Below, one piece after another: positions 3,160-63,441 of a stretch of 64,000 bases of DNA. The translations under genes were made by a program, and so were the position numbers. The notes under the pieces are model-generated. The model did no database searches. It was not told the origin of the DNA and saw nothing but the letters and a program-made list of their open reading frames with translations. Where the stretch lies: positions 62,001 through 126,000 of the IMG/VR virus record IMGVR_UViG_3300031951_000003. One strand, 5' to 3'. How positions within the stretch are numbered: the stretch's first letter is position 1; each line of letters begins with the position of its first letter.

Positions 3160-3175
3160 AACAATAAATATATTG

Positions 3176-4849
3176 TTAGGACTCTTTACGTAACTCTCTG
3201 TTGTAATGTTCGAAACGGTCGTGTTCAGTTGGTGTCATTAGAAGTAAACCAGGATTTAATTTTTCTTCTTTTGTCAGTTGATACATATGACTCATCCACG
3301 TTTGTTCAAATGGATGTGCCCAAGTAACATCCAAAAACATTTTTTTGTTACCTGGTCTTGAAATAATTTGAGGCCAGTTACAATAATATATGTCGCCTGT
3401 CGCATATGGAACTTTTCTGTGTGAAAGAACTTTTTTGAACTCTGTCTTTGGCGCATTCGGGTCCAATCCTATTTGTGGTAATCTTGGATTTAAGGGCCAA
3501 TACTTTGACCTAACATCTTGAGGAACATTATACCAAGACCATTGAGTCCCGTTATCTCCGTAGAATTCAGAATAATTCAATTTTAAGAAATCAAAGTTTT
3601 CCTTTTGCATTATTTGCATCGAGATTGAAAATAGATTTGGTTCGTATCTTGAAAAACCGTTTTTACATTTCGAACCTTCATTCGGATAAAAAAACATGTC
3701 ATCTTCAAAAAACAAATAATAATCCAAATCTGTTTCTTCAAAATGTTCTGCAATCCACTGCCTTCCTCCACAAATACCCAAGTTATCTTTTTTGATATGT
3801 TCAAAATTATATTCATCACAAAGTTGTTTATACTCTTCTGTTGTTGACAAATCACTTGAGTTATCAAGTAAGAATTTTTTTGTTTTAAGTATGAATTCTT
3901 TATCATACATTAACATTGAATTAATCAACGTTTTGAATTGGTTTGGACTATTGAAAGTTATAACATATAGACCAACTTTGTTAATATCCAAATTTGAAAC
4001 TTGTCTATGAACTGATTCTGTTTTTACTTTCAAATCATCGTTCTTCAAATCCTCAAAAAATTTACCTAACAAACCATTTGATTCTATTTCAAAATAATTT
4101 ATTAACTCGGAGTGTCTATAACACATTATGCTGAATAAAGATTCTTCAGTTCCCATATATCCCGAATCCAAGGTTTCTTTCATCAGAGAATAATATATTG
4201 AATTGATTTCTGATATTGAGTGTTTTGGTCCACCGAAGAACCCACCTCTAGCAACCCTCTCAACTTTAGCACCTGCCATAGAGTTCATCTTATCGAAATT
4301 GAACCCGTGGACTTCTGTATTAGCTTCATAAGGAAAACAAACGAAACTGAATTTGGAGATATATTTTACTAATTTATCCAAAACCTTGTCGTGTGTAAAG
4401 TAACCAGGATGCACAGTATTTGTCAACCCACCGTCAATCCAAAACAGATATTCTGAATCAAACCTATCCATTATTTTTGCATCATTCAAAAGATAAACTT
4501 TTGACATAACCAACGGGTTATAGTTTTCCAATCTCGATTGAGTTGAATCTTTTAACCAACCAACTTGATTATACCACTCAGGGTTATTTCTTATGTTTTG
4601 GATTTTATCAAAAAATTCATTATTCCTGAACCAAGACATGTCTCTTACAATAAATTGTGTATTTGACTTATCCCTTTTTGAAAAAACAAATTCCTCTAAA
4701 CTTTTATCACCATAGATAATCATATTGGTATTGACATCCAATAGTTTTTCAAATTTATCCAAATAATGTTGAAAAGGTCTTGACCAACCTTCACTTAAAT
4801 CACCTCTTCCGATGTCCCAAATTCCTGTTACAAGTGTTATATTACTCAT
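3176..4849 (-). CDS. Two-domain glycosyltransferase (WlaTC/HtrL-like N-terminal domain plus GT-A-like C-terminal domain)
   Basis: TLVTGIWDIGR...FWIDGG typical of the HtrL family; second half VGLYVITFNSP...YYLFFEDD carries a DxD-like motif. Confidence 0.7.
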   Translation of the reverse strand: MSNITLVTGIWDIGRGDLSEGWSRPFQHYLDKFEKLLDVNTNMIIYGDKSLEEFVFSKRDKSNTQFIVRDMSWFRNNEFFDKIQNIRNNPEWYNQVGWLKDSTQSRLENYNPLVMSKVYLLNDAKIMDRFDSEYLFWIDGGLTNTVHPGYFTHDKVLDKLVKYISKFSFVCFPYEANTEVHGFNFDKMNSMAGAKVERVARGGFFGGPKHSISEINSIYYSLMKETLDSGYMGTEESLFSIMCYRHSELINYFEIESNGLLGKFFEDLKNDDLKVKTESVHRQVSNLDINKVGLYVITFNSPNQFKTLINSMLMYDKEFILKTKKFLLDNSSDLSTTEEYKQLCDEYNFEHIKKDNLGICGGRQWIAEHFEETDLDYYLFFEDDMFFYPNEGSKCKNGFSRYEPNLFSISMQIMQKENFDFLKLNYSEFYGDNGTQWSWYNVPQDVRSKYWPLNPRLPQIGLDPNAPKTEFKKVLSHRKVPYATGDIYYCNWPQIISRPGNKKMFLDVTWAHPFEQTWMSHMYQLTKEEKLNPGLLLMTPTEHDRFEHYNRELRKES

Positions 4850-5726
4850 AAATTCTTTTAAATTCTTCTAATATTTTATAGAAACTTTTATTTTTCTGAA
4901 ATAACTCATCTGTTACACCTTGAGGTGCATTATCCCTGCACCACCAAATATCAAAATGTTTTCTCTCAAATAACTCAATATGATTGAAATACATAAGAGT
5001 CATTATTTGTTCTTCATGAGGTAAACCCTCATCGTTAGATAAAACTTCTTGGACATAGTTTTCGAATATATTGACTATATTATCCCACTTGTCCCTGTGA
5101 CCACCAAACAATCCTCCTATGATATGAATACTTCTATCATAATTTTTATACCATCTTGGACTTACAGTTCCTGACCAATAGTTTCTTTCATTTTCTTTTC
5201 CTAAAATTAAAAATTTGTCTTTAGTGTCTTCTATCAAATTTTTCAAAAAATCATTATCAAACAAATTGCTTTCATAAAATCTTCTTAAGGCATGTTTTGT
5301 TTCAGTCAAATACTTGAGAGGTATTAAACCACAATGGGATAATCCCGCGTCTATCCAATAATAGTTATCGTAGGATTTATCCTCATTCCACCACCATGAA
5401 AATTTAGAATATTGTATTTCGATACATCTATCCCCTCTTTTAATCTCATCGACATTTTTTCTCGAATCAATTAAATGTTTAAACTTGGAATTTGAAATAT
5501 CGTATGTTGTAAATTTCAACTTGGATTCTGGTATATTGTTTTCTTCATAGAAAAATTTCTTTAGGGAATCTATTTCTCTATCCGAGGTATAACATAAAAA
5601 ATCCGCATCGGTCATCTTCAATAATGACAATAAACTATATCTATAGTGGGCACCTCTGTTAGGTCTACCACCAAATTCAGTTCCATAAAGGTCACTATAA
5701 ATTGCGGTTATAAACTTAGTTGACAT
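4842..5726 (-). CDS. WlaTC/HtrL-like glycosyltransferase
   Basis: KFITAIYSDL...YYWIDAGL...IIGGLFGG...HEEQIMT parallels the N-terminal domain of the adjacent 557-aa protein. Confidence 0.65.
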   Translation of the reverse strand: MSTKFITAIYSDLYGTEFGGRPNRGAHYRYSLLSLLKMTDADFLCYTSDREIDSLKKFFYEENNIPESKLKFTTYDISNSKFKHLIDSRKNVDEIKRGDRCIEIQYSKFSWWWNEDKSYDNYYWIDAGLSHCGLIPLKYLTETKHALRRFYESNLFDNDFLKNLIEDTKDKFLILGKENERNYWSGTVSPRWYKNYDRSIHIIGGLFGGHRDKWDNIVNIFENYVQEVLSNDEGLPHEEQIMTLMYFNHIELFERKHFDIWWCRDNAPQGVTDELFQKNKSFYKILEEFKRIYE

Positions 5727-6459
5727 TATAAGGTAAATATTTTTTTTCTGTTTTCATTTTTTTATTTTCTGATTCATTCAAAAATCTGTGATTAATCTTG
5801 ATTGGTGAATAGACATTCCAATTGTATGTTTGGGCGTAGAAATTGTTATACATTCCCTGCGACACATCAGAATAAGAATTTTTCTGAGGGGCAATTGGTA
5901 AGATTGGTGCATATGATTGAATTGAAGGATACACATGTTTTACCAATTGTTCATCAATAGGAATGATAAAATCACCACTATAAAAACACTTATCTTTAAT
6001 TTTTTCTATTTTTTCGAAAGATGATTCATCGTATATCAGAATATTTGTTGCGAAAGTTTCGGTCAATCTTTCATGTGGTTTTGGAGGTAAGTTTGTCAAA
6101 TCCAAAAGCATACTGTATTTTTCACTGACGTTCATTGGACGATTGAGTGTTGGAGAAAGATTCAATACACCAAAATCAATTCCATTTATATTTCTCTCCA
6201 AATCCTCAATGAAATTTTTTGCATAAGGCATAAATACACAATCATCTTCTATCACCATTACTCTCTTGTAACCTCTTTCTTTAGCCATTTCAATTATTGA
6301 CAAATGAGAAAGAGCACAACCCATATAATCGTTACGTGGAACAGCCTTAAACAAATCGTAATCCCAACCGATGTAATTCATCTCGAACTTTATATCTTCA
6401 AGTCTGTCAGGTCTACTTTCCAAATTTATAACAAATTTTGGTATGTCTTTGAAAATCAT
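5716..6459 (-). CDS. Glycosyltransferase family 25
   Basis: FVINLESRPDR, GCALSH...AKERGYKRVMVIEDD signature. Confidence 0.85.
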   Translation of the reverse strand: MIFKDIPKFVINLESRPDRLEDIKFEMNYIGWDYDLFKAVPRNDYMGCALSHLSIIEMAKERGYKRVMVIEDDCVFMPYAKNFIEDLERNINGIDFGVLNLSPTLNRPMNVSEKYSMLLDLTNLPPKPHERLTETFATNILIYDESSFEKIEKIKDKCFYSGDFIIPIDEQLVKHVYPSIQSYAPILPIAPQKNSYSDVSQGMYNNFYAQTYNWNVYSPIKINHRFLNESENKKMKTEKKYLPYNVN

Positions 6460-7803: not shown

Positions 7804-9822
7804 TTAATCTGTAAGTGTGATTTTTGCTACATCTGTATCTTGTAAAGGAACTCCACCACTAGTTAATCCAATCATTGATGGTGGGATTGTTGACCCTGAA
7901 TATAAGAACGACCCATTAAGTTCAACTATAAAATTAACAGGAGTTCCTGTTATAGAAGCTCTTGGATTACCGAATGTTAGACCGTGTAGTGCTGTAAAAG
8001 TTTGACCTGATGTTACAGGTAAAGCTCCTGATAGATTGGTAAGTGTTATACTTCCACCATCATCAACAAAATCTATAATTTCCGCTCCACCTGTTGATTC
8101 GTTAACCGCTATGATTTCGGGACAAATAAGAGTTCCTGTTATTTCACCGTTAGTTAATTCCCATCCGCCACCGCCAAGTAAGTTAAGCCATCCTGATGGA
8201 TAAATATCTGAGAAAGATGCCCCACTAAATATGATATCATTCGGATATGACGGTTGATTATAGTAATAAGAAGTTGTCGAAGTTCCTCCTGAACAAGCGT
8301 CCAATCCAGACACTGTTGAAAATTTAGTTGCACCAATTAATGCGAAAGTTCCTGGTGTTTCAGTAGGTGTTGGTGTGTATGTTGCAGTTTGAGATGGTGT
8401 TTGAGTTGGAGTTTCTGTGTTGGTTGGTGTTTGAGTTGGAGTTTCTGTGTTGGTTGGTGTTTGAGTTGTTGTTGGTGTTGGTGATGATATTGGTGTAGAT
8501 GTTGAAGTCACTGTAGGTGTCGGTGTCGGTAAGTTCGAACATCCGTTAGGGTCGGAACTTGTAATCAATCCTGCTCCACCGCTAACAATAAACCAAGCAA
8601 TCCCATTAGAATAATAACCATCAATAACAGGAACTGTCAGAGCTGTATTTTGATAAAGTGACTCACCAACGTTTGGACCTACTCCACCCGCTACAGTTCC
8701 GTAGACAGGATTAGTTGAACCCAAACAAGCTTCATTCGGAGTTGAACCTGAACCTAAATTATATGTATAGTATCCAAATGTTGCTGTTGGTGTTGTAGTT
8801 GGAGTCGGTGTTGGTGTTTCAGTTGGAGATGCGGTTACAGTTGCTGTTGGTGTTGGAACAACCAAACAAGAACTGAATGCACCCACTTGAGCACCATTCG
8901 AATCTATTTCTGTTACAATATTTGAACTGTTATAAAAACCTGCCAACATTGTTGACGGACCAAAACTTTCAGGATAGAATTGTGTGCAGTTATCGAAAAG
9001 AACCGCATTACCCCAAATATTTCCAACTATTCCTGAAGAACATGCTTCATTCTCAGTTGAACCTGAACCTACTGAAAACTCAAATCTTACTGGTGTCGGT
9101 GTAGGTGTTGGAGTTTGAGTTGGTGTTTCTGTGTTAGTTGGAGTTGGTGTAGGTGTTTGACTTGAAGTAGGAGTTGGTGTTGGACCACAATTTCCATCAA
9201 CTGTAATTGTAGCTCCCGTAATACAACCTGGTCCACAACCAGAAGCAACTATGTAAATAATACCATCTTCAGTATAATAACCTTCCGGATTACCTGTATT
9301 TGGACCTGTAGCATCTGACCAAACTAATGTTGAATCCGCCAAACTTGTTCCATTTACAAATATGTTTGCTGTTTGAACACAATCACAAGTTAGTAATATA
9401 TCCGTCTCATCGTGACATCTCACAATAGCAGTTCTCTCAACGTTTGTAGGTGTTGGAGTTTGCGTTGGAGTTTCCGTGTTAGTCGGAGTCTGTGTGAACG
9501 TTGGAGTATTTGTCGGTGTTTCTGACGCAGTTGGTGTCTGAGTATTGGTTGGTGTTGTTGTAGGCGTTGCAGTGTTCGAAGGTGTTTGAGTCGGACTAGA
9601 TGTCGGAGTAGGTGTGGGTCCAGTTGGTGGGAACGCACCCATATTTTGGAGAACGATTGTTGTATTCGCCGTGGAATATGTTCCATCTATCAACCAAATG
9701 TTTTTTACCTGATTTGGTTCTAATTCTACTTGGTAATCCCACATTGAATCTTCGCATCTTCTATAGTTGAAAGTTGCTATTGTGGAACCTGTGTTTGTTA
9801 AAATATATTTACTACAAGCCAT
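7804..9822 (-). CDS. Mucin-like Thr/Pro-repeat putative virion protein (672 aa)
   Basis: Several TPTPT/TETPT tracts separate Cys-bracketed globular modules; no signal peptide; TATTTATA at 9836-9843 (minus strand). Confidence 0.75.
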   Translation of the reverse strand: MACSKYILTNTGSTIATFNYRRCEDSMWDYQVELEPNQVKNIWLIDGTYSTANTTIVLQNMGAFPPTGPTPTPTSSPTQTPSNTATPTTTPTNTQTPTASETPTNTPTFTQTPTNTETPTQTPTPTNVERTAIVRCHDETDILLTCDCVQTANIFVNGTSLADSTLVWSDATGPNTGNPEGYYTEDGIIYIVASGCGPGCITGATITVDGNCGPTPTPTSSQTPTPTPTNTETPTQTPTPTPTPVRFEFSVGSGSTENEACSSGIVGNIWGNAVLFDNCTQFYPESFGPSTMLAGFYNSSNIVTEIDSNGAQVGAFSSCLVVPTPTATVTASPTETPTPTPTTTPTATFGYYTYNLGSGSTPNEACLGSTNPVYGTVAGGVGPNVGESLYQNTALTVPVIDGYYSNGIAWFIVSGGAGLITSSDPNGCSNLPTPTPTVTSTSTPISSPTPTTTQTPTNTETPTQTPTNTETPTQTPSQTATYTPTPTETPGTFALIGATKFSTVSGLDACSGGTSTTSYYYNQPSYPNDIIFSGASFSDIYPSGWLNLLGGGGWELTNGEITGTLICPEIIAVNESTGGAEIIDFVDDGGSITLTNLSGALPVTSGQTFTALHGLTFGNPRASITGTPVNFIVELNGSFLYSGSTIPPSMIGLTSGGVPLQDTDVAKITLTD
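8401..8460. repeat. Perfect 30-bp tandem repeat x2 encoding [10 protein letters not shown]
   Basis: ttgagttggagtttctgtgttggttggtgt repeated twice. Confidence 0.9.
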
Positions 9823-9873
9823 TTTACTTTTTTTATATAAATACTGAGAACTCGCTCAATTTTATTTTCTTTT

Positions 9874-13700: not shown

Positions 13701-14717
13701 ACTCAATCTCAAAGAAAGTGCATTTGACACTCCGTCATATAGTGGGTCTAGCTCAGGATACTTGACAGTTGTTTCACAATTACACGGACAACCACAGGAG
13801 CAATTTGTTGATGTTCCTCCCGATTGTTGATAAACTTTCATACAAGAATGTTCAGCGGTAATTCCCGTCAGTAGACATTCGCAGGTATGCATACAAGTCA
13901 ACCCAGATGTAACTCTTGTGTAACCTGTATCTTGTTTTGGGTGTCCGTCCGCATAATGATAAAATTTGTTTTCGGCTCTCGCACCCATGTAGAAGAATGC
14001 CCCTTTATTTTCAGGGTATCTTTTATTCAAACCTACATTTGTATCACCAGTCCATCTATAACGTAACATAACCTCAGTTGTCCAACCCCAATGAGGTCTT
14101 TGAGGGAATACTTGATAGGTATAACCTGGTAACTTATAGAATCCTTGGTAAAATCCTCCATTCAATCTGGCAAAATTTCCTACTAAATCACCATAACTGT
14201 CATACGATAAATCGTAGGTATATGAATCATCATTCCAAAGACGGTTACTTGTTGTTGTAAAACCTGTGATAGGATGAAGTTTCATTCTCCTATCATATTT
14301 GTATCTTGAAAACTTGTCGGATATGTTTGTATATAGACCAGTCGTTATCTCAATTGTTTCACCCGACATTCTTTTTACTAAACCATTATCAATACCCGTA
14401 AGACCAACATCACAAAGAGTTTGTGCTGATGGACAAAAATTTGGGTCGAGGTTGTCTGGGTTCCAGTAGTTTTCGGATACTATGGTATCAAAATCAAATG
14501 TTACCGCAGAGACTGTCGCAACAGTTGTCCCTGTCGAATTAAATTCAAATTTAAAAGGCATTCTATTACCGTCATCATCACCAATTAATAATGGTGAAAA
14601 AATTACCTCTTGGTCAAAGGTTTTTTCGTCTGACGCAAGACAAATATCCGTTATTTCATTAACAGGTAATAGGCCTAACCTTCTAAAATTGTATTGATTA
14701 ATATTCTGATACGACAT
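10788..14717 (-). CDS. Large mucin-like putative virion protein (1309 aa) with LamG/ConA-like domains and long Thr-Pro tracts
   Basis: [22 protein letters not shown] and [28 protein letters not shown] are LamG-type C-terminal patterns; hundreds of residues of TP repeats in the middle; TATTTATC upstream. Confidence 0.8.
11761..11904. repeat. 48-bp tandem repeat x3 encoding [16 protein letters not shown]
   Basis: Unit gtattagtaggagtattagtaggtgtatctgt(g/a)attgttggagttgta starting at 11761, 11809 and 11857. Confidence 0.9.
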
Positions 14718-14725: not shown

Positions 14726-14754
14726 GATAAATACCTTGTGTCATAGTATTTATA
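14726..14754. promoter_or_regulatory. Divergent pair of candidate late-promoter motifs
   Basis: TATTTATC on minus (14726-14733) before the 1309-aa gene and TATTTATA on plus (14747-14754) before the 272-aa gene. Confidence 0.65.
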
Positions 14755-14769: not shown

Positions 14770-15588
14770 ATGATTACAACAGATAAAGAATTTTATTCTT
14801 CACCATATTATTTCTTTTTAAGAGATAAAGGAAAAGACTATTCATTATATTTCTCTGTAGAGCCAACTCTTGTGGAAGCAAGAAAAAAAGATGAAATGAT
14901 TAAGGTCCCTAAATCTAAGGTTAAACACGTCTTAAATTATTTGGAAAAATTATTGAAAAATAAATCAAATAAAAACACAAAAGACATGAAAGGGGAAATT
15001 GAGGAGCTAGTTGCAACCGATGGTTCAATGACAAACTCTAAAATCCCAATCTTAGACCCGAAACTTCACCCTAGAAAAACTATGGACCAAACTGTTGCAG
15101 CTTCCCGTATAACAAACGACCCAATTTCACGTGGTTACAGAACTTACTATGGCGAGTCAATCGAAGAAATGAGCGAAGAGGATATGTCTGCAGCTTTCGG
15201 ATATGAAGAAACAAAAGACCTCGACGGAAAAGAAACTTTCAAGTATTTCAAAGATGAATTAGAAATGGGTTCCGAAGAGGCCAAGGACCGAACAGAACAA
15301 CAAGGCAAAGACCCTTCAGGTAAAAGAGACAAAAAGTCAAAATACAGAAAAGACCCTAATTTTATTTCAAGACAAATTTTACCTGAAATCCAAAAACAAA
15401 AAGCAATAAAAATGTTAGAGGATATGTTGGCCAAGAAAAAGGATTCGTCGAACGCAGACATTTCAGAAAAAGAAAAAAATATAGAAGTTTCAAGTCTGCT
15501 TAAGAAAAATGCGAAATCTTTGTTGAAACAAATGGAAAAAGAAGGATTATCTAAAAAAGACTTTTTGAAATTACTAGACGGTGAATAA
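14770..15588 (+). CDS. Hypothetical protein (272 aa), possible head-associated
   Basis: Long ORF after a TATTTATA motif; highly charged. Confidence 0.7.
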   Translation: MITTDKEFYSSPYYFFLRDKGKDYSLYFSVEPTLVEARKKDEMIKVPKSKVKHVLNYLEKLLKNKSNKNTKDMKGEIEELVATDGSMTNSKIPILDPKLHPRKTMDQTVAASRITNDPISRGYRTYYGESIEEMSEEDMSAAFGYEETKDLDGKETFKYFKDELEMGSEEAKDRTEQQGKDPSGKRDKKSKYRKDPNFISRQILPEIQKQKAIKMLEDMLAKKKDSSNADISEKEKNIEVSSLLKKNAKSLLKQMEKEGLSKKDFLKLLDGE

Positions 15589-19324: not shown

Positions 19325-19325
19325 C

Positions 19326-19931: not shown

Positions 19932-19941
19932 ATTTTTGATA

Positions 19942-23091: not shown

Positions 23092-23092
23092 A

Positions 23093-25153: not shown

Positions 25154-25156
25154 AAA

Positions 25157-30962: not shown

Positions 30963-31769
30963 ATGGAAAACAAATTTTCAGTATCTGTAATATTACCTAT
31001 CAAATCTTCTAAAGCAAAAGACTTTGAAGAGTATTTTAATAAAGCAATCAATTCAATCAAAAATCAGTCTGTAGAGCTAGAGGAAATTCTAATCGTTCAT
31101 TCAATTGAAGAATCACTTCAAGAATTTTTGAAAAGTTATAATTTCGAAAATCTGAATGTAAAATTATTAGAGTGGAGTCAAAAACCTAATTACTGTTCTC
31201 AAGTCAACTTCGGAATTAAAAATGCGAAAGCAACTTGGATTTCTCTTTTTGAATTTGATGATGAATACTCAAATATTTGGTTCAAAAATGTAAAGAAATA
31301 CGCTGAATCATATCCTGATGTTCAGATGTTCTTACCAGTAGTTGTCGAAGTGGACGAAAAAGGGACCTTCGCTGGTTTCACAAATGAAGCAACGTTTGCG
31401 GCAAACTTTACACAAGAAATGGGATTCTTGACAAATGACACACTTCAAGATTATCAGAACTTCCAAACCGCAGGGTCAGTATTCAAAAAATCTTTGATTG
31501 ATGATTTTGGTGGTTTCAAACCCTCAATCAAACTCACTTTTATTTATGAGTTCCTTTTGAGACTTACGTATAATTCAGTTTCTATTATGACTATACCCAA
31601 ACTTGGTTACAAACACGTTAACCTTAGAGAGGGTTCAATATTTTGGAATTACAAAAATGGTGATTCGAAAATGTTAGAAGATGAAGTTAAGTTTTGGCTA
31701 CAGACAGCCAAGAAAGAATATTTCTTTACTGACGACAGAGTCATAAAATATGAATCACCAAATGCGTAA
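30963..31769 (+). CDS. GT2 family glycosyltransferase
   Basis: VSVILPI, VNFGIKNA and FEFDDEY. Confidence 0.8.
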   Translation: MENKFSVSVILPIKSSKAKDFEEYFNKAINSIKNQSVELEEILIVHSIEESLQEFLKSYNFENLNVKLLEWSQKPNYCSQVNFGIKNAKATWISLFEFDDEYSNIWFKNVKKYAESYPDVQMFLPVVVEVDEKGTFAGFTNEATFAANFTQEMGFLTNDTLQDYQNFQTAGSVFKKSLIDDFGGFKPSIKLTFIYEFLLRLTYNSVSIMTIPKLGYKHVNLREGSIFWNYKNGDSKMLEDEVKFWLQTAKKEYFFTDDRVIKYESPNA

Positions 31770-32515
31770 TGCAAGAAACCCTCTCCGCTTTAACAGAAGA
31801 TATATCATCGAAAAAAAGGGGTAGGAAAGCAGTTAAAGAAAATTATTTTGACGTAAGGGAAGAGACTGCGGTAAGAAACTTTTTGTTAGCCGAATCTTCA
31901 GAAGAAAAAAATAAAATCTATAACGAATTCCTAAGAGCTCCTTTGGATAAGATGATATCATCTATTATCCGAAGATACAAATTGTATCGTAAAGATATGG
32001 ATTTCATTGAAATACACACTGACACTCATTCTTTCCTGATGACAAAGGTGGATAAATTCAAACCCTCTAAAAACAAAAAAGCTTATTCTTATTTCGGCAC
32101 TATTTGTAAGAATTATTTGATGGGTCAAATAATTAAAGACCAAAAAGAGACGAACAGAAAAATATCTTATGAGGATATATCCTCAATGATTGAAGAGCGT
32201 CCAGATATGATTTACACAATTGATGATGACGTTTTGGAAACAGATGTATTGATTGTAGAATATCTCAAAGAATTGAAGGATTTTATTGAGGTAGAAAACT
32301 TGAATGAAAATGAAAAAAAGTTGGGTTATGCACTCATAGACTTGTTTGACAACTACGAAAGTATTTTCTCCGGCGCAGATAACAATAAATTCAATAAAAA
32401 TGTAATCTTATTGTCATTGAGAGAGATGACAAATCTAAGCACCAAAGAAATCAGAAGTTCAATCAAAAGATTCAAAAAGTTATACTTGGTTATTCAACAT
32501 AAATTAAAAAATTAA
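31769..32515 (+). CDS. Sigma-70-like factor, candidate late sigma (gp55 analogue)
   Basis: KFKPSKNKKAYSYFGTICKNYL resembles sigma region 2.3-2.4 (FDP...AFSY...I.N); C-terminal HTH-like segment LREMTNLSTKEIRSSIKRFK. Confidence 0.6.
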   Translation: MQETLSALTEDISSKKRGRKAVKENYFDVREETAVRNFLLAESSEEKNKIYNEFLRAPLDKMISSIIRRYKLYRKDMDFIEIHTDTHSFLMTKVDKFKPSKNKKAYSYFGTICKNYLMGQIIKDQKETNRKISYEDISSMIEERPDMIYTIDDDVLETDVLIVEYLKELKDFIEVENLNENEKKLGYALIDLFDNYESIFSGADNNKFNKNVILLSLREMTNLSTKEIRSSIKRFKKLYLVIQHKLKN

Positions 32516-32534
32516 TGAAAAAGTATTTATTGAT

Positions 32535-38742: not shown

Positions 38743-38769
38743 TTTGATTATTATTTTTATCTTTGATTA

Positions 38770-40070: not shown

Positions 40071-40098
40071 ATATTTCTTAATATAAATATCCTGTAAA

Positions 40099-41268: not shown

Positions 41269-41286
41269 ATAAATAAATATCATAAT

Positions 41287-44759: not shown

Positions 44760-44813
44760 GAAAAAATATATTTATTTTACCTTATAAATAGTGTCAAAAG
44801 ATAAAAAGTTTAT

Positions 44814-45137: not shown

Positions 45138-45172
45138 ACTTATTTTCTTTATAAATATGTTATTACAAAAAA

Positions 45173-45196: not shown

Positions 45197-45199
45197 GAA

Positions 45200-45412: not shown

Positions 45413-45416
45413 AAAT

Positions 45417-46133: not shown

Positions 46134-46158
46134 TAAGTCTTTTAGGATAAATATATTG

Positions 46159-47591: not shown

Positions 47592-47614
47592 CTTGGTGTA
47601 TTTTCAAATAAATA

Positions 47615-49453: not shown

Positions 49454-49490
49454 ATTACAATTTAACTTATTACGTCAATAATATAAATAG

Positions 49491-55167: not shown

Positions 55168-56178
55168 TTAGTTGTTTAATCCGTTAAACCCTCCTAAGGT
55201 TATTGCGTTTAGTTGTATCGCAATGCCATTCTCGGTTGCGTATGCTGGATGAGGTACTTGTGTTCCTGCAGGTAATGTCCCGCCACTGAACGAACCTAAC
55301 ATTTCAGCAGTATATTCATAATTTTGGTTTACAGAAGTTCCAGTATAAACCACACCACAATCTGCACAATCAACAAATGGACCGTCTACAAATGTTGCAG
55401 TTGCAACGATTGGACCATAACTTGTATCAGTTATGAAATAACAGTTATAATCTAAATTGTTGTTATCAAACGTGAATAAATACATTTCACCAATAGTTGG
55501 TGAAACTCCTGAAATCTCTACACTCCATGTTGTTCCAATACAATCCGTAATTAACCAGAATCCTGGAGGTGTTGGAGTTGGAGTTCTTGTTGGCGTAGGT
55601 GTTGTTGTGTTTGTTGGTGTCACAGGTGGTGTTCCTGTTGGCGTTGATGTTACAGTCGGAGACACAGTAGGTGTAGTTGTTGTTGTCGGTGTAACCGCTG
55701 GAGTTCCTGTGTTTGTTGGTGTTTGAGTTAATGTTGCCGATACTGATGGTGTAGGTGTTGATGTTTGAGCAGGTGTTCCTGTATTGGTATTCGTTGGTGT
55801 GTTTGTTGCCGTTACCGACGGAGTTGGTGTTGACGTAACTGAAGGAGTTCTTGTTGGAGTAGGTGTTTGAGTTCCTGTTACAGGAGGTGTTGATGTTACC
55901 GTAGGAGTTTGAGTTGTGGTAACTGATGGTGTAGGCGTTGGGGTGACAACCGCTTGACATGTTGCACAATCACCATAATCAGATGACATGAAACTAACCA
56001 CATCCAAACCTGTTGTAGGCTCAGCATTATCGATAATGTCATAACAACCCTCAGCTGTAGCTCCTGTGAATCTTAAAAAGTAATTCCCGTTTACCGCAGG
56101 GAGATTTGAACTATCAAAATCGACTAGTATCGCTGGACCGCCACTACAAGCACCAATAAGATATGTAACTAAAGCCAT
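55168..56178 (-). CDS. Third mucin-like Thr/Pro protein (336 aa)
   Basis: A TP tract of over 100 aa lies between two related modules that each end in DCxxC; TATTTATA at 56191-56198 (minus). Confidence 0.75.
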   Translation of the reverse strand: MALVTYLIGACSGGPAILVDFDSSNLPAVNGNYFLRFTGATAEGCYDIIDNAEPTTGLDVVSFMSSDYGDCATCQAVVTPTPTPSVTTTQTPTVTSTPPVTGTQTPTPTRTPSVTSTPTPSVTATNTPTNTNTGTPAQTSTPTPSVSATLTQTPTNTGTPAVTPTTTTTPTVSPTVTSTPTGTPPVTPTNTTTPTPTRTPTPTPPGFWLITDCIGTTWSVEISGVSPTIGEMYLFTFDNNNLDYNCYFITDTSYGPIVATATFVDGPFVDCADCGVVYTGTSVNQNYEYTAEMLGSFSGGTLPAGTQVPHPAYATENGIAIQLNAITLGGFNGLNN

Positions 56179-56227
56179 CTAATTTTTCTTTATAAATATA
56201 CGATTTATATAAAATAACTAATTATTA

Positions 56228-56971
56228 TCAATCAAGAGACTTAATTTCAATTGAAAGTTCTTTGTCTTTGATTTTCGTTTTTTCATCGAATAATTTTCCA
56301 ATGTGTCCTGACCTTCTCAAAAATTTGAAAACTAAATTTTCATATGAGAATTCACCGTCTTTATTTAAACCTGATTGTCTGTAGTCTTTGAGTTTTTCTT
56401 TCAATTTTTTCAACTCTTCAGTTTTACCTGTTGATTTAGCGTCTTCAACAGCATCGTCAATTTTTTCAGTCCAACATTTGATTTTATTTTTCAAAACTGA
56501 CATATTAAGCTTCAATTCCTTTTTTTCAGGTTTATGAATCCATTCGTCATTCATTATTGAAAATACACCATCACTGTGGTGTTCGTCAGATTCACCCTGC
56601 GCATAGACTTCCACATCATATCCATAAATTTTGATATTGTGTTTGGAATTGAATATTTTCTTTTTTAAGTCAAATAGTTCTACGTAAAGTTCTTTTTCTT
56701 TTCCGTATCTCTCAAAATCTATAATAACGTGTAAATCAAAGTCTGAAAACTCAGACCAATTGTAGTTTGCCAAAGAACCCATTAGAAACACGTCTTCAAC
56801 AAAAACATCATCACCTAAATCATCCACAAATTCTTCAGCAATCTTCATTAACCCTTTTCTGATTTTAGGTTTCAAAGTTGCCTCCTTTGGGTCATTTGGA
56901 TTTTCCCAAATTTTTGGATTCAAAGTATCACGAACCGAAAAACTACTTATAATTTTTTGAAAATTACTCAT
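56228..56971 (-). CDS. Pol-beta superfamily nucleotidyltransferase
   Basis: GSLANYNWSEFSDFDLH (GS...SDxD) plus a downstream YDVEVY. Confidence 0.8.
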   Translation of the reverse strand: MSNFQKIISSFSVRDTLNPKIWENPNDPKEATLKPKIRKGLMKIAEEFVDDLGDDVFVEDVFLMGSLANYNWSEFSDFDLHVIIDFERYGKEKELYVELFDLKKKIFNSKHNIKIYGYDVEVYAQGESDEHHSDGVFSIMNDEWIHKPEKKELKLNMSVLKNKIKCWTEKIDDAVEDAKSTGKTEELKKLKEKLKDYRQSGLNKDGEFSYENLVFKFLRRSGHIGKLFDEKTKIKDKELSIEIKSLD

Positions 56972-56992
56972 CCTAAATAAATAGTCAGAGTG

Positions 56993-58596: not shown

Positions 58597-58669
58597 AATT
58601 TTTAATTTTTGTTTTATAAATTTATTATTTATTTTTGAGTAGTCAACTTTGATACCAAACCACCACAAA

Positions 58670-58743
58670 TGACAATTTGTAAGTGGAATTATAGATAATA
58701 TGACAAAGTGTCAATAAAAAAAATAAATCCTGTCAATTTGTCA
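58670..58743. promoter_or_regulatory. Array of three TGACA-N3-TGTCA near-palindromes between the divergent hsp20 and clpC genes
   Basis: TGACAattTGTAA (58670), TGACAaagTGTCA (58701, perfect) and TGTCAattTGTCA (58731). Confidence 0.65.
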
Positions 58744-58794
58744 AAACATTTGTTTGTGTCTCAAATTTGATGTTAATTTGTAAAAATATCTACT

Positions 58795-60810
58795 ATGAAT
58801 GATTTAATGGATGACGACGAAAAAATGATGAGCAAGAAACAAAAACAATCATCAGACAGTCCAACCCCTGTGTTGGATAATTTTAGTCGAGACTTAAATA
58901 AGCTCGCAGAACAAGGTAAGTTGGACCCAGTTATAGGTCGCGACAGAGAAATCTTGAGAATTGCACAAATTCTTTCAAGAAGAAAAAAGAACAATCCAAT
59001 TATTATCGGAGAACCAGGTTGTGGTAAAACCGCAATTGTTGAGGGACTGGCAATGAAAATTGTAAGTGGTGATTGTCCCCGTAACTTAGTTGACAAACGT
59101 ATCGTAAACTTAGACCTTACCTCTGTTGTCGCAGGAACAAAATATCGCGGCCAATTTGAGGAAAGAATGAAAGTTATCATCGAAGAACTACAATCCAATC
59201 CGAACGTTGTTGTATTCATTGATGAAGTACACACATTGGTTGGTTCTGGTAACTCGGCGGGGTCTATGGATGGTTCCAATATTTTCAAACCCGCTCTTTC
59301 ACGCGGTGAGATTCAAATTATCGGTGCTACAACCCTCGATGAATTCCGAAAGAATATAGAAAAAGACGGGGCACTAGAGCGTAGATTCCAAAAAGTTGTT
59401 GTTGACCCATCAACAGTTGTTGAAACAATCCAAATTCTCAAAAACATCCGTGAGAAATATGAAAGTTATCACAAGGTTTCATATTCGGATGAGGTCATCG
59501 AATCATGTGTTAAACTTGCAGACCGATACATCACCGACCGTGAATTCCCTGATAAAGCATTCGACATCTTGGATGAAGTAGGTGCAAGAATGCAGACAGA
59601 ACTCAAGGTCCCTGAATCAATCGAAGAATTGAAAAAGAAGGCGGCTGAAATACGTCAGTTAAAAGTTGATGTAGTAAAAAAACAGAACTACGAACAAGCG
59701 GCACAGTTACGCGATAAGGAAAAGAAATTGTTGGACAAATTGGATACTGAGAAGAAGAAATTCGAAGAAGAAATGATTAACAACAAACAACAAATTTCCG
59801 TTGAGGATGTGTATGATGTGGTTTCTTCTATGACCAAAATCCCTGTGAATAAAATGAGTGTTGATGACACTAAAGCTCTTGTCAATTTGGATAAGGAATT
59901 AATAGGTAAAGTCATTGGACAAGACGATGCTGTTAGGAAAATTGCTAAGGCAATCAAAAGAAACAGACTTGGTATCAAAGACCCAAATCGTCCCATCGGT
60001 TCATTTGTTTTCTTGGGTTCGACAGGTGTGGGTAAAACTCACTTAGCTAAACAATTGGCAAAAGAAATGTTTGGAAGTGAAGACTCCCTAATCAGAGTTG
60101 ATATGAGTGAATATCAAGAAAAACATACCGTATCTAAATTAGTAGGTGCTCCTCCAGGTTACGTAGGTTACGAAGAAGGTGGACAGTTGACTGAAAAGGT
60201 AAAAAATAAACCATACTCAGTTATTCTTTTCGACGAAGTTGAAAAGGCGCACAAAGATGTGTTCACAATTCTTCTTCAAATTTTAGATGATGGACATGTA
60301 ACTGACAGCTTAGGTCGTAAAATCAATTTCAAAAATACCTTGATTATTTTGACATCAAACCTCGGTGTAAAGAAATTACAAGATTTTGGAACAGGTATTG
60401 GGTTTGGTTCTAGCACTTATAGTAATGAAGAGGCCAAGAAACAAGTATTGATGAAGGAAATGAAAAATTTCTTCTCTCCTGAGTTTTTGAATCGTATTGA
60501 CGATACAATTGTATTCAACTCTCTTAGTCAAGATGATATTAAAAAAATCACTAAGATTGAACTTGATAAGTTAATCTCACGTCTCAACGAAATGAATTAT
60601 AAAATCACATACGATGAGACCTTGACTGAACATCTCGCAAAAGTTGGATTCGATGAACTATATGGTGCAAGACCTCTCAAACGAGCAATCCAAGATAAAG
60701 TCGAGGATTTGATTTCAGAAGAAGTTTTGACCGACAAATTAGTAGAAGGAAAAAACTATATTGTCAAAGTAGAAGAAGATACTGTTAAGGTTGTTAAGAA
60801 AGGAAGATAA
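58795..60810 (+). CDS. clpC: ClpC-type AAA+ chaperone/protease subunit lacking the N-terminal Clp-repeat domain
   Basis: Two AAA+ modules (GEPGCGKT, GSTGVGKT), UVR-like KKQNYEQAAQLRDKE middle domain, GIGFG ClpP-docking loop; starts directly at TPVLDNFSRDL. Confidence 0.88.
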   Translation: MNDLMDDDEKMMSKKQKQSSDSPTPVLDNFSRDLNKLAEQGKLDPVIGRDREILRIAQILSRRKKNNPIIIGEPGCGKTAIVEGLAMKIVSGDCPRNLVDKRIVNLDLTSVVAGTKYRGQFEERMKVIIEELQSNPNVVVFIDEVHTLVGSGNSAGSMDGSNIFKPALSRGEIQIIGATTLDEFRKNIEKDGALERRFQKVVVDPSTVVETIQILKNIREKYESYHKVSYSDEVIESCVKLADRYITDREFPDKAFDILDEVGARMQTELKVPESIEELKKKAAEIRQLKVDVVKKQNYEQAAQLRDKEKKLLDKLDTEKKKFEEEMINNKQQISVEDVYDVVSSMTKIPVNKMSVDDTKALVNLDKELIGKVIGQDDAVRKIAKAIKRNRLGIKDPNRPIGSFVFLGSTGVGKTHLAKQLAKEMFGSEDSLIRVDMSEYQEKHTVSKLVGAPPGYVGYEEGGQLTEKVKNKPYSVILFDEVEKAHKDVFTILLQILDDGHVTDSLGRKINFKNTLIILTSNLGVKKLQDFGTGIGFGSSTYSNEEAKKQVLMKEMKNFFSPEFLNRIDDTIVFNSLSQDDIKKITKIELDKLISRLNEMNYKITYDETLTEHLAKVGFDELYGARPLKRAIQDKVEDLISEEVLTDKLVEGKNYIVKVEEDTVKVVKKGR

Positions 60811-60839: not shown

Positions 60840-60851
60840 GTATTTATAAGT

Positions 60852-61460
60852 ATGAGTAATTTTTCAAGATTATTAGGTCAGTTCAAAGAACAGTTTCCTG
60901 ATGAATTTAAATCAAAAGTTGACATTATCGAAAAATTTGTTGTTGATTATATTAATAAAAACAAAATCACAATCAAGTTTTTGAATTCATGTGGAACCGG
61001 TTTCAGTGGGGTAAGAACCAAAGAACAAGTAATCATTTGTTCGCCAATGAACATGAGAACAATTGGTGATTTTCTTTATACCATATTTCACGAAATACGT
61101 CACGAAAAACAAATCCGAGATATTAAGATGGATAATCCCTTAACCGATTATGATTTGGAGGATTTTGAAAAACTATATAATCAATACTGGGAAATGGAAC
61201 TGGATGCAGACCAGTTTGCAAAAAATATGATTGCCAAATTAGTTATTAAATTAGAAATACCCATTTGGTTTGCCAAAGGGCAGTTCAATTTATCACACTA
61301 TATCGAACAATATCCATCGATGTCAAAAAGTGTTCAGATGTCCCTCAGGTCAATTGTAGACACAATTCGACATATAAAAAAATCGGGTGGTGAATTTAAT
61401 GATATTCAAGACCACCCGATGGTTAAAACACATATTGAAAGATTAGAAAACTTTATCTAA
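60852..61460 (+). CDS. Putative zincin metalloprotease-like protein (HExxH)
   Basis: IFHEIRHEKQ and a downstream E-x-DA (EMELDADQFA); TATTTATA at 60841-60848. Confidence 0.55.
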   Translation: MSNFSRLLGQFKEQFPDEFKSKVDIIEKFVVDYINKNKITIKFLNSCGTGFSGVRTKEQVIICSPMNMRTIGDFLYTIFHEIRHEKQIRDIKMDNPLTDYDLEDFEKLYNQYWEMELDADQFAKNMIAKLVIKLEIPIWFAKGQFNLSHYIEQYPSMSKSVQMSLRSIVDTIRHIKKSGGEFNDIQDHPMVKTHIERLENFI

Positions 61461-62302
61461 ACCTTATAAGGGTTTTGGTTGTAACTATATTCCTTAGCCT
61501 TTTTAAAATGTAGTTTGTACCCAAGTTCTTCAATCATTTTTCTTCCCATATCGATTCCATTGTAAACATCTTCCACAACAACGTATTCATTTTTTGTGTG
61601 GTAATCATAGTACCCTATTGAGAAATTAATACAAGAAAAATCAAACTTTCCTCTCAAGGCATAAACATCTGTATATGGATGGACCATATATTCCATATCC
61701 GTTGGGACCATACCTTCAGTTAGTACTTTGTCACACGCCTTAAAAAAGTCCGTATCTCTATCGAATAGAATTTGACCGAAACATTTTTCAGTAATCATCC
61801 AGTTTTCAGGTGCGTCAAACTGAATTCCATATCCAACATTTTCGAAAAATTCAGGGTCTGCGTTTCTTGAACCGTGACAACCTGTTTCTTCAGAAACGAA
61901 AAACGCTGCTTTCAAATATGGAAGTTCTTTGAGTAATGTAAGACATGCAAACACTCCGCATTTATCATCTCCACCTATACCAGTGGGATTACCTTGGTCG
62001 TTATATGCCTTTAAAGATAATTTGAGTGCTCCTTGAGCATTTGGAAGATTTTCTTCAACAACGTTAATCGTGTCAAGTTTGTGTACAGTGTCTGTGTGAG
62101 ATATTACACAAGGGAAATAAAAACCTTCAGGTAAATCCCCAACCGGTTTCTTTGTTGCATACACATTATTTTTTTCATCGAGATAATATTCGATTTGATT
62201 TTCTTCCAACCATTTGGTTAGATAAAGAACCATTAAATCTTCTTTGTATGTGTGTGTTGGAACACTTAAAACTTCTTTGAGTAACTCTAAACTTTTTGTC
62301 AT
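61457..62302 (-). CDS. M20/M28 family zinc peptidase (likely start MTKSL at 62302)
   Basis: SHTDTVH, GGDDKCG, EETGCHGS and YHT; TATATTTG at 62307-62314 (minus) upstream. Confidence 0.8.
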   Translation of the reverse strand: MTKSLELLKEVLSVPTHTYKEDLMVLYLTKWLEENQIEYYLDEKNNVYATKKPVGDLPEGFYFPCVISHTDTVHKLDTINVVEENLPNAQGALKLSLKAYNDQGNPTGIGGDDKCGVFACLTLLKELPYLKAAFFVSEETGCHGSRNADPEFFENVGYGIQFDAPENWMITEKCFGQILFDRDTDFFKACDKVLTEGMVPTDMEYMVHPYTDVYALRGKFDFSCINFSIGYYDYHTKNEYVVVEDVYNGIDMGRKMIEELGYKLHFKKAKEYSYNQNPYKV

Positions 62303-62322
62303 ACTGCAAATATATGACAAAA

Positions 62323-63369
62323 TTACAATTCAACCAAATTAAATAATTCTGGTTGATAAAGTAATTTGTTGAAACCGTCTTCAGAAATTTTGAATTTATT
62401 TATACCCGACATCCCTTTCTTCTTTTTCAAAGATATGTCAATTTTTTTTGTTTCCCTATCAAAACCATCGATTCTAAAAATTAAATCCGACCCTTTTGGT
62501 ATTTCATACCATATACCGATTTTATGTTTTTTTGTAACCCTATCAATCATATCCATAAAGGTGTTAGAATCACCTGATTCATAATCTTCTTCAATTCTCT
62601 CCAAAATTTTTTCCAACGACCTATTTGCTTCTTTATTAAAACTTTCATTGTCGAATACATCATCATCTTGATATTCAAACCTATCTTCATCCCATCCACC
62701 AATTGTTCTATTGGAATCTTGGAATATAGTTTTCAGTAATTTTTTGATTGACACGTGTGGAACATTATATTGAATGAAATTTGATATTAAATCACCCACA
62801 GTTGTTTTGATTCCATCTCCATGTCTCTGAAAACCAAAATCCCCTAAAAAATTATTCAATTCCGAATTTACATGTTCAGATGCAACGTGTCTTATTTCAA
62901 TATTTTTTTCGTGGGTCCAATCAATCACTATTGAGCCAATCTCTCGGGGATAATACTTTTCTAAAAACACTGCAAAACCAGCTCTGTCTTCTTCATCCTC
63001 GTAGTCAAATTTTTTACTATATATAAGTTTGGATATTCTTTGTAAAAGTTCTTTATTATCTGAATCGAAATTGTACCAAGGACCATACCCGTCTAAAAAA
63101 TCTTGTTCGGATGCACTTGAATCTTGAATATCGTAAGTATTGTACGGATTGTTAATTGCCTGTTCGAACCAAATATCATCATCATCCAAACCAATAATTT
63201 TTCCAAACTCATTCATGTCTGTGAATTCTATAATAACTTTTGACAAAGCAGGATTTTCCCTACTCGCAATAACTCTTCCAATGGACTTATCCGCCCCTTC
63301 CAATTCATACTGATTAATTTTTCCTTTTACAAATTTTCTTAAAGCAAAAAAACTATCTCCTGGTTCCAT
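62323..63369 (-). CDS. Hypothetical acidic protein (348 aa)
   Basis: TATTTATA at 63374-63381 (minus) upstream. Confidence 0.7.
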   Translation of the reverse strand: MEPGDSFFALRKFVKGKINQYELEGADKSIGRVIASRENPALSKVIIEFTDMNEFGKIIGLDDDDIWFEQAINNPYNTYDIQDSSASEQDFLDGYGPWYNFDSDNKELLQRISKLIYSKKFDYEDEEDRAGFAVFLEKYYPREIGSIVIDWTHEKNIEIRHVASEHVNSELNNFLGDFGFQRHGDGIKTTVGDLISNFIQYNVPHVSIKKLLKTIFQDSNRTIGGWDEDRFEYQDDDVFDNESFNKEANRSLEKILERIEEDYESGDSNTFMDMIDRVTKKHKIGIWYEIPKGSDLIFRIDGFDRETKKIDISLKKKKGMSGINKFKISEDGFNKLLYQPELFNLVEL

Positions 63370-63441
63370 ATCGTATAAATAGACTTTTAATTTGGAAATT
63401 TAATATTTATGTATATCTTTGTTGTGTTCTTTGAAAATATT

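What the first reader, a model, noticed from the sequence alone, without database searches (positions are those of the whole stretch)
3163..63411. Recurrent sense-strand TATTTAT(A/T/C) motif before late-type genes: the reverse complement of the T4 late promoter
Seen about 3-30 nt upstream of start codons on both strands. Plus strand: 14747, 32524, 36752, 60841, and 63404 before the tmRNA. Minus strand: 3163, 9836, 14726, 40082, 41272, 44783, 45150, 46146, 47607, 49482, 56191, 56976, 63374. These precede mostly structural, head and TP genes; I did not see it in front of the 17.4-31.8 kb enzyme genes. Known: the T4 gp55 late promoter is TATAAATA on the sense strand; here the orientation is consistently opposite. 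Inference: a distinct late promoter class that produces very short leaders.
Basis: partly seen in the sequence, partly recalled or inferred. Interest (0 to 1): 0.7.

Follow-up and report, generated by a model that had tools for sequence, protein, structure and literature searches.

The report
Phage-specific TATTTAT promoter, many leaderless genes
A giant T4-like phage of freshwater Bacteroidota places a conserved 8-base signal (TATTTATW) just upstream of about 100 genes. It is most likely the promoter for a previously unannotated phage sigma factor, and often sits so close to the ATG that the mRNA would have no leader.

Summary
All 18 listed sites exist. In the window, 17 of 34 TATTTAT[ACT] matches lie within 40 nt upstream of a start codon on the sense strand, against 0.74 expected (P about 1e-19). 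In the whole 321-kb genome, 105 of 369 genes carry the motif, against 11.9±3.1 in AT-matched shuffles.

The motif has no -35 partner. It is the rarest 7-mer of its composition inside genes. It is invariant at orthologous sites in dozens of related contigs, and it also heads virion genes in the cultured Flavobacterium phage immuto.

A second class of canonical Bacteroidota promoters (TTTG-N19-TAnnTTTG) precedes about 30 other genes and shows the same spacing to the ATG. That identifies the host phylum and the register: TATTTATW sits where the host -7 element sits.

Spacing to the ATG falls into two groups. In 55 genes it is 4-6 nt, which implies leaderless mRNA. In about 31 genes it is 12-17 nt, giving a short A-rich leader.

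The window gene 31769-32515 encodes an unannotated sigma-like protein whose closest single-domain structural match is T4 gp55. It is the best candidate reader of the motif.

"Reverse complement of the T4 late promoter" describes the sequence correctly but is not needed: the two 8-mers agree at 6 of 8 positions in the same orientation. Late timing and the start sites remain untested.

The parts
14747..14754 (+). TATTTATA, 15 nt before the ATG of 14770-15588. It heads the long + strand block that contains the glycosyltransferase genes and the sigma-like gene.
32524..32531 (+). TATTTATT, 3 nt before the ATG of 32535-32900 (leaderless type), directly after the stop of the sigma-like gene.
   Evidence: The same arrangement is found in 75 of 80 related contigs and in phage immuto.
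36752..36759 (+). TATTTATA, 11 nt before 36771-38279.
60841..60848 (+). TATTTATA, 3 nt before 60852-61460 (leaderless type), directly after a hairpin plus T-run terminator.
3163..3170 (-). TATTTATT, 3 nt before 2782-3159 (leaderless type).
9836..9843 (-). TATTTATA, 13 nt before 7804-9822 (672 aa, phrog_15511 domain).
14726..14733 (-). TATTTATC, 8 nt before 10788-14717 (1309 aa). It is divergent from the 14747 site.
40082..40089 (-). TATTTATA, 11 nt before 39177-40070.
41272..41279 (-). TATTTATT, 3 nt before 40702-41268 (leaderless type), after a terminator.
44783..44790 (-). TATTTATA, 23 nt before 43182-44759. This gene lies upstream of the major capsid gene 41335-43146, which has no motif of its own.
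   Evidence: Retained in 43 of 43 distinct orthologous upstream regions.
45150..45157 (-). TATTTATA, 12 nt before 44814-45137, after a terminator.
46146..46153 (-). TATTTATC, 12 nt before 45417-46133.
   Evidence: Retained in 48 of 48 orthologous regions.
47607..47614 (-). TATTTATT, 15 nt before 46893-47591.
   Evidence: Retained in 52 of 52 orthologous regions, with spacers of 13-19 nt.
49482..49489 (-). TATTTATA, 28 nt before the portal gene 47615-49453.
   Evidence: Invariant in about 65 distinct relatives while the flanks vary.
56191..56198 (-). TATTTATA, 12 nt before 55168-56178.
   Evidence: Retained in 7 of 7 orthologous regions.
56976..56983 (-). TATTTATT, 4 nt before 56228-56971 (leaderless type).
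   Evidence: Retained in 11 of 11 orthologous regions; the 7-mer spacer stays at 4-5 nt.
63374..63381 (-). TATTTATA, 4 nt before 62323-63369 (leaderless type).
2749..2756 (-). TATTTATT, 63 nt before the DNA-polymerase-like gene (..2685). A possible member with a longer leader.
63391..63421 (+). Host-type promoter TTTG-N19-TATCTTTG in front of the tmRNA.
63442..63837 (+). tmRNA gene.
38758..38765 (+). Host-type -7 element TATCTTTG, 4 nt before the ATG of 38770-39180 (leaderless type).
62307..62314 (-). Host-type -7 element TATATTTG, 4 nt before the ATG of 61457-62302. TTTGG lies about 20 nt upstream.
31769..32515 (+). Sigma-like protein (248 aa): a gp55-like sigma-2 domain followed by a C-terminal helical domain that aligns with sigma-4. 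Candidate reader of TATTTATW.

Best explanation
TATTTATW, preceded by any base except T, is the promoter element of a phage-specific transcription class in a 321-kb T4-like phage of freshwater Bacteroidota.

It sits where the host -7 element TAnnTTTG sits, about -12 to -5, but has A at -7 and A or T at -5. It needs no -33/-35 box, like the T4 late promoter.

It is most likely read by host RNA polymerase core carrying a phage sigma. The best candidate is the unannotated 248-aa protein at window 31769-32515, which has a gp55-like sigma-2 domain and a sigma-4-like C-terminal domain.

Initiation 4-5 nt downstream would start the mRNA at the A of the ATG in about 55 genes (leaderless). In about 31 genes it would leave a roughly 8-12 nt A-rich leader without a Shine-Dalgarno sequence.

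Host-type promoters (TTTG-N19-TAnnTTTG) drive a smaller, presumably early set of genes. That set includes a second, conventional sigma gene and the tmRNA. The TATTTAT class drives most of the remaining genes, including the virion genes.

Shown here: enrichment, strand bias, placement, avoidance inside genes, conservation, and the sigma fold. Inferred: the start sites, the timing, and which sigma reads the motif.
For: Enrichment and orientation:
- 105 of 369 genes carry the motif, against 11.9±3.1 in shuffles. The sense-to-antisense ratio is 105:25.
- In the window, P = 9e-20 for placement upstream of starts.

Anatomy:
- There is no conserved -35/-33 region. The core is 7 invariant bases with V at the 5' flank and W at the 3' flank.
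- Several sites directly follow a hairpin plus T-run terminator.

Selection:
- TATTTAT is the rarest of the 21 T5A2 7-mers inside genes (27 sense and 28 antisense, against medians of 63 and 83). It is the commonest upstream (109 against a median of 17).

Conservation:
- At six orthologous sites, 200 of 200 distinct relatives keep the motif while the spacers drift.
- At three sites without the motif, 0 of 116 relatives have it.
- It is the top upstream 7-mer in 80 further related loci (302 of 1834 genes against 27 expected).
- It is also the top upstream 7-mer in the virion module of cultured Flavobacterium phage immuto (11 of 44 against 0.8), where it precedes TerL, portal and sheath genes.
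- A TATTTAA variant is found in Rhodothermus phage RM378.

Register:
- Host-type TTTG-N19-21-TAnnTTTG promoters precede about 30 genes and show the same two spacing groups.
- In F. johnsoniae the start site lies 4-5 nt after this element, and 87% of mRNAs have leaders longer than 10 nt (PMC6847099).
- There is no Shine-Dalgarno signal; the upstream region is A-rich.

Sigma:
- Weak hits to gp55 and Sigma70_r2 fall on the same ORF.
- 31 of 81 family members hit Sigma70_r2.
- A family profile hits SigA region 2 and gp55 in the PDB.
- The AF2 model has pLDDT 91. All 50 best VIA-align matches are sigma factors. T4 gp55 (7d7c_F) scores Z 10.8 over 117 residues.
- Homologs exist in immuto, RM378 and LR756508. 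Immuto has no other Sigma70_r2 hit.
- No RNA polymerase beta or beta' gene is found in the phage.
Against: - No transcription start was mapped. Metatranscriptome contigs covered only the capsid gene and its upstream neighbour at 200-nt resolution, and none lay on the promoter stretch.
- There are no timing data. The motif also precedes a DNA-polymerase-like gene and many small ORFs, so 'late' may be too narrow.
- The sigma-like gene lies in a block headed by a TATTTAT site, with no host-type promoter seen. This leaves a bootstrapping problem.
- The sigma-like protein appears to have a sigma-4-like domain although the promoters have no -33 box.
- LR756508 has the sigma homolog but shows only TTTTAAA/TATTTAA-like motifs.
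- My gene calls and start codons come from a simple home-made caller.
Confidence: 0.7

Rival explanations
1. The motif is a real promoter, but it is read by the phage's other sigma: the conventional sigma-70-family protein (regions 1.2, 2 and 4) at G000 291706-292503. That gene is expressed early from a host-type promoter. The gp55-like protein would then serve a different, unrecognised promoter set.
For: - The conventional sigma gene lies directly behind a gene with a canonical host-type promoter, which gives a clean cascade.
- The gp55-like gene itself lies in a TATTTAT-headed block.
Against: - Immuto uses the same motif but has no detectable second Sigma70_r2 protein.
- The motif has no -33/-35 partner for a region 4 to bind.
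- No third motif class was found for the gp55-like protein.
Confidence: 0.2
2. One reading: the element is the T4 late promoter used in inverted orientation, which would imply a different geometry of recognition by a gp55 homolog.
For: TATTTATA is the exact reverse complement of TATAAATA. The sense-strand orientation is consistent.
Against: - The two 8-mers share 6 of 8 positions in the same orientation, so no inversion is needed.
- Sigma-2 domains read the non-template strand directionally (established knowledge).
- The register matches the host -7 element.
Confidence: 0.05
3. The motif acts at the RNA level, as a translation-initiation, processing or stability signal in the 5' UTR, rather than as a DNA promoter.
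For: - It lies close to start codons in an organism without Shine-Dalgarno sequences.
- A-rich tracts follow it.
Against: - Spacing ranges from 3 to more than 28 nt and drifts between relatives while the motif stays fixed.
- It is avoided on both strands inside genes.
- It directly follows terminators.
- It copies the spacing distribution of the bona fide host DNA promoter element.
Confidence: 0.05
4. The motif is recognised by a host alternative sigma or by host sigma-A itself, and the phage sigma-like proteins have other roles.
For: It shares T-12, A-11, T-8 and T-6 with the host -7 element.
Against: - It lacks the nearly invariant T-7 and G-5 and the -33 box.
- It is conserved together with a phage sigma-like gene in phages of different Bacteroidota/Rhodothermota hosts.
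- Host genomes were not examined.
Confidence: 0.08

Closest known systems
T4 late promoter TATAAATA, read by gp55 with gp33 and the gp45 clamp (PMC2988020)
   Same: - A single 8-bp AT-rich element with no -35 box.
- About 50-100 copies on both strands in front of virion genes.
- 6 of 8 bases are identical.
- The phage has T4-like capsid, portal and terminase genes and a gp55-like sigma-2 domain protein.
   Different: - The central AA is replaced by TT.
- The register and spacing follow the Bacteroidota -7 element.
- No gp45-family clamp was detected.
- The candidate sigma carries its own C-terminal sigma-4-like domain, instead of a separate gp33.
- The class may cover more than late genes.
- Many sites abut the ATG.
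Bacteroidota primary promoter, -33 TTTG / -7 TAnnTTTG (sigma-ABfr; PMC6847099)
   Same: - Same position relative to the ATG.
- Shared T-12, A-11, T-8 and T-6.
- Bona fide examples of this class occur in the same genome.
   Different: - A at -7 and A or T at -5, in place of the nearly invariant T and G.
- No -33 element.
- Host mRNAs are mostly leadered (87% have leaders longer than 10 nt), whereas many of these sites imply no leader.
Leaderless mRNAs of Actinobacteria, Deinococcus and Archaea
   Same: The promoter element lies at a fixed short distance from an ATG, so transcription would start at the start codon.
   Different: Here the evidence is spacing only. The setting is a phage of a phylum in which leaderless mRNAs are reported to be uncommon.

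Membership tests
T4-type (gp55-dependent) late promoter | 8-bp consensus TATAAATA at about -13 to -6 | tested here: not met
   The consensus here is TATTTATW. T4-type TATAAATA occurs in sense orientation upstream of only 8 of 369 genes. The two 8-mers share 6 of 8 positions.
T4-type (gp55-dependent) late promoter | No -35 element | tested here: met
   Information content is about 0 at all positions from -45 to -2 relative to the motif in 97 aligned sites.
T4-type (gp55-dependent) late promoter | Precedes virion (late) genes on either strand | tested here: met
   It precedes the portal gene, the gene upstream of the capsid gene, and large structural proteins here. In immuto it precedes TerL, portal, sheath and structural genes. 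It is not exclusive to such genes.
T4-type (gp55-dependent) late promoter | Phage encodes a gp55 homolog | tested here: inconclusive
   - phrog_234 E = 0.004.
- Family profile against gp55 chain 7d7c_F, E = 0.09.
- Structural match Z 10.8 over 117 residues.
The protein is clearly sigma-2-like. Specific orthology to gp55 is not proven.
T4-type (gp55-dependent) late promoter | gp45 sliding clamp and gp33 co-activator | tested here: not met
   The gp45 family (phrog_223) has no match in the genome. gp33 was not searched for. A divergent clamp could have been missed.
T4-type (gp55-dependent) late promoter | Late timing and a start site a few nt downstream | not testable with these tools
   Only assembled metatranscriptome contigs were available, and none reached the promoter.
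Bacteroidota sigma-A promoter | -7 element with invariant T-7 and G-5 | tested here: not met
   The motif has A at the T-7 position. At the G-5 position the counts are A 47, T 40, C 8 and G 2 of 97.
Bacteroidota sigma-A promoter | -33 TTTG about 19-21 nt upstream | tested here: not met
   No conservation there for TATTTAT sites. It is present at the separate TAnnTTTG sites.
Sigma-70 family (protein at 31769-32515) | Region 2 fold and sequence signature | tested here: met
   - 31 of 81 family members match Pfam Sigma70_r2, best E = 5e-7.
- Sigma-2 crystal structures superpose at 2.7 A over 93 residues, Z 9.4-9.5.
Sigma-70 family (protein at 31769-32515) | Region 4 helix-turn-helix | tested here: inconclusive
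   Full-length sigma factors align through residue 248. No Pfam region 4 hit was found, and the C-terminal domain was not searched on its own.
Leaderless mRNA | Primary 5' end at the A of the AUG | not testable with these tools
   Inferred from 55 genes with a 4-6 nt gap after TATTTAT and from the 4-5 nt element-to-start distance in F. johnsoniae.

The most novel reading that the evidence does not exclude
T4-like phages of Bacteroidota use a single-chain late sigma: a gp55-like sigma-2 domain fused to a sigma-4/gp33-like domain. This is the 'fused late sigma' that the T4 literature notes has never been seen. It would read TATTTATW without a -35 box or a T4-type clamp, and start about one gene in six exactly at the AUG, in a phylum where leaderless mRNAs are rare.
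Probability: 0.3. Interest if true: 0.75.

Novelty: new variant of a known kind. Interest (0 to 1): 0.6.

Why it matters
- It gives a usable promoter rule for a very abundant group of freshwater phages. More than 8000 near-identical copies of the sigma-like protein were found, and its family holds 1146 clusters at 50% identity.
- It assigns a function to a conserved "hypothetical" protein in cultured phages (immuto35A_152 and Rm378p020).
- It shows how the T4 late-promoter logic was re-tuned to the unusual Bacteroidota transcription machinery.
- It predicts widespread leaderless translation in a phage of a phylum without Shine-Dalgarno sequences, which can be tested directly in immuto and its Flavobacterium host.
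- The motif also helps with gene-start and operon annotation, and with host-phylum prediction for uncultured phages.

Tried and rejected
- **Start-site test.** The first read-laying run (window 40000-45999, four RNA runs) showed contig coverage only over the capsid gene and its upstream gene, with none from 44800 upward. That fits a start near 44783 but the bins are 200 nt wide. The second call, on 44680-44859, laid nothing. Inconclusive, and no raw RNA reads were on offer.
- **Nearest records.** A megablast of the head region against the phage collection found no match.
- **Single-protein scans of the sigma-like protein.** hmmscan against Pfam and PHROGs found nothing. Pairwise BLASTP against the RM378 sigma and T4 gp55 was uninformative. 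The single-sequence AF2 model was poor, pLDDT 48. Only the family alignment worked.
- **Homolog search.** The search for homologous proteins returned only relatives of at least 88% identity.
- **Other transcription proteins.** The gp45 family (phrog_223), phrog_12791 and the RM378 sigma had no match in the genome. The T7-type RNA polymerase search had no positive control, so it is uninformative.
- **Function of motif-bearing genes.** A Pfam scan of ten motif-bearing genes outside the window gave almost no functions, so a functional split between the two promoter classes could not be made.
- **Third promoter class.** No third motif was seen in the 76 remaining intergenic regions.
- **Literature.** Six searches found no report of this motif or of this sigma family. 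The library lacks most subscription journals, so prior description cannot be excluded.
- **Chance in AT-rich DNA.** Rejected.

Full report
**What the window is.** The window is bases 62001-126000 of a 321,139-bp phage genome with direct terminal repeats, rated complete.
- It equals an IMG/VR lake contig and is held by many freshwater metagenomes.
- It encodes T4-type major capsid, portal and large terminase proteins.
- The nearest capsid proteins are those of an uncultured huge phage (LR756508), Flavobacterium phage immuto and Rhodothermus phage RM378, at 37-45% identity.

**Checking the observation.** Every listed coordinate holds the motif on the stated strand; 63404 is TATTTATG.
- Overall counts are only mildly raised: 34 against 20.6±4.7.
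- Placement departs far from chance: 17 of 34 matches lie within 40 nt upstream of a start on the sense strand, against 0.74 expected (P = 9e-20).
- I called 369 genes in the whole genome with a simple codon-usage caller and refined the starts.
- TATTTAT is by far the most enriched upstream 7-mer.
- After start refinement, 105 genes carry it in sense orientation within 50 nt. Three hundred dinucleotide-preserving shuffles of those same AT-rich windows give 11.9±3.1 (maximum 22). The antisense orientation occurs for 25 genes, and T4's TATAAATA for 8.

**Anatomy of the motif.** I aligned 97 sites.
- They show seven invariant bases, with 'not T' on the 5' side and A or T on the 3' side.
- There is no information anywhere from -45 to -2, so there is no -35/-33 partner.
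- Several sites directly follow a GC hairpin with a T-run.
- The gap from TATTTAT to the ATG falls into two groups: 4-6 nt in 55 genes and 12-17 nt in about 31 genes. The longer gaps usually read like TATTTATaaagaaaa.
- Upstream regions lack any Shine-Dalgarno signal (G is 4-10% at -6 to -12) and are A-rich.

**Evidence of selection.**
- Among the 21 7-mers made of five T and two A, TATTTAT is the rarest inside genes on both strands (27 and 28, against medians of 63 and 83). It is the commonest upstream (109 against a median of 17).
- At six sites with orthologs in related contigs, every distinct relative keeps the motif: 43/43, 48/48, 52/52, 39/39, 7/7 and 11/11.
- Longer spacers drift by 1-6 nt between relatives, whereas the leaderless-type spacer stays at 4-5 nt.
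- At three genes without the motif (capsid, 46159-46608 and terminase), none of 116 relatives has it.
- In 80 further loci fetched with the sigma-like protein (59-100% identity), it is again the top upstream 7-mer: 302 of 1834 genes against 27 expected.

**A second promoter class fixes host and register.** About 30 genes are preceded by TA..TTTG, usually with TTTG or TTG 19-21 nt further upstream.
- This is the canonical Bacteroidota sigma-A promoter.
- In F. johnsoniae, T-12, A-11, T-8, T-7, T-6 and G-5 are nearly invariant, the start site lies 4-5 nt after the element, and 87% of mRNAs have leaders longer than 10 nt (PMC6847099).
- In the phage these sites show the same two spacing groups: a peak at 4 nt and a second group at 15-19 nt.
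- As an 8-mer, TATTTATW peaks at 3-4 nt from the ATG. It therefore occupies the same register as the host element.
- It differs from the host element at -7 (A for T) and at -5 (A or T for G), and it lacks the -33 box.

**Relation to T4.**
- The two also agree at 6 of 8 positions read in the same direction, so no inverted geometry is needed.
- The T4 element likewise lacks a -35 box, occurs about 50 times, and serves late genes on both strands (PMC2988020).
- The same TATTTAT motif is the top upstream 7-mer in the virion module of the cultured Flavobacterium phage immuto (11 of 44 genes against 0.8 expected). There it lies before TerL, portal, sheath and structural genes.
- RM378 has TATTTAA (9 of 31 against 0.5). 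LR756508 shows TTTTAAA/TATTTAA-like sequences.

**Who reads the motif.**
- No RNA polymerase beta or beta' gene was found, with working controls. Host core polymerase with a phage factor is therefore likely.
- Two sigma candidates exist. The first is a conventional sigma (regions 1.2, 2 and 4) at G000 291706-292503. It lies behind a gene with a host-type promoter.
- The second is the window ORF 31769-32515.
  - It draws weak hits from both the gp55 family and Sigma70_r2 at the same place.
  - Its family holds 1146 clusters at 50% identity.
  - 31 of 81 aligned members match Sigma70_r2.
  - A family profile hits SigA region 2 (E = 0.007-0.02) and T4 gp55 (E = 0.09) among PDB sequences.
  - An AlphaFold model built from the alignment has pLDDT 91.
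  - Foldseek's top hits are almost all sigma factors.
  - With VIA-align all 50 best hits are sigma factors. T4 gp55 (7d7c_F) scores Z 10.8 over 117 residues. Isolated sigma-2 domains fit at 2.7 A. Full-length sigma factors align through the C-terminal domain.
- Homologs occur in immuto, RM378 and LR756508. They are annotated as hypothetical in the two annotated records, immuto and RM378.
- Immuto has no other Sigma70_r2 match. This favours the gp55-like protein as the reader of the motif.
- In 75 of 80 relatives, and in immuto, a TATTTAT site follows this gene's stop directly, 3-6 nt before the next ATG.

**What remains open.**
- Start sites and timing are untested.
- The motif also lies 63 nt upstream of a DNA-polymerase-like gene and before many small ORFs.
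- A simple assignment puts 222 genes downstream of TATTTAT sites and 102 downstream of host-type sites. 'Non-early' is therefore safer than 'late'.
- The gp55-like gene sits in a block headed by a TATTTAT site, so how it is first expressed is unclear.
- No gp45-type clamp was detected.

**Verdict.** This is a real, conserved, phage-specific promoter class. It is a new variant of the T4 late-promoter principle adapted to Bacteroidota, with predicted leaderless or very short-leader mRNAs and a newly recognised sigma-like family as its probable reader.

Noticed in passing
window 17415-31769 (+): A long operon of glycan-synthesis genes in a phage: GT2, GT4, GT10 fucosyltransferase-like, GT11, and an NAD epimerase/GDP-mannose dehydratase-like enzyme. 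It has no internal promoter motif and no internal terminator signal.
   Followed up: partly
window 58795-60810 (+) and intergenic 58600-58795: A ClpB-like double AAA+ ATPase. Its 198-nt divergent upstream region has neither promoter class, but it holds several TTGTCA/TGACAA boxes that look like regulator sites.
   Followed up: no
window 63442-63837 (+): A phage tmRNA (Rfam 76 bits) with the unusual tag AEEATVVA. It is driven by a canonical host-type promoter.
   Followed up: partly
G000 134,989-140,972 (-) and 161,395-161,483 (+): 24 tRNA genes, mostly in one minus-strand cluster.
   Followed up: no
G000 205,652-210,470 (-): Six adjacent genes (179-341 aa) that may be paralogs. Each has nearly the same upstream sequence, GGGTCGTGA-TATTTAT-TGTTG-ATG.
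   Followed up: no
window 41335-43146 (-) and upstream 43147-43181: The major capsid gene has no promoter motif of its own here or in 25 relatives. It has an A-rich leader that is similar in immuto and RM378. RNA contig depth rises about 25-fold at its start, but contigs of related phages may add to that depth.
   Followed up: partly
window 7804-9822, 10788-14717, 55168-56178 (-): Three large proteins share a repeated domain of unknown function (phrog_15511). Each is headed by a TATTTAT site.
   Followed up: no
window 32535-32900 (+): A 121-aa protein of unknown function always follows the sigma-like gene, in immuto as well (116 aa). Its size is similar to T4 gp33 (112 aa). No family hit was found.
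   Followed up: no
G000 291,706-292,503 (-): A second phage sigma factor with regions 1.2, 2 and 4. The gene directly upstream of it encodes a DUF6576 protein and carries a leaderless-type host promoter.
   Followed up: partly
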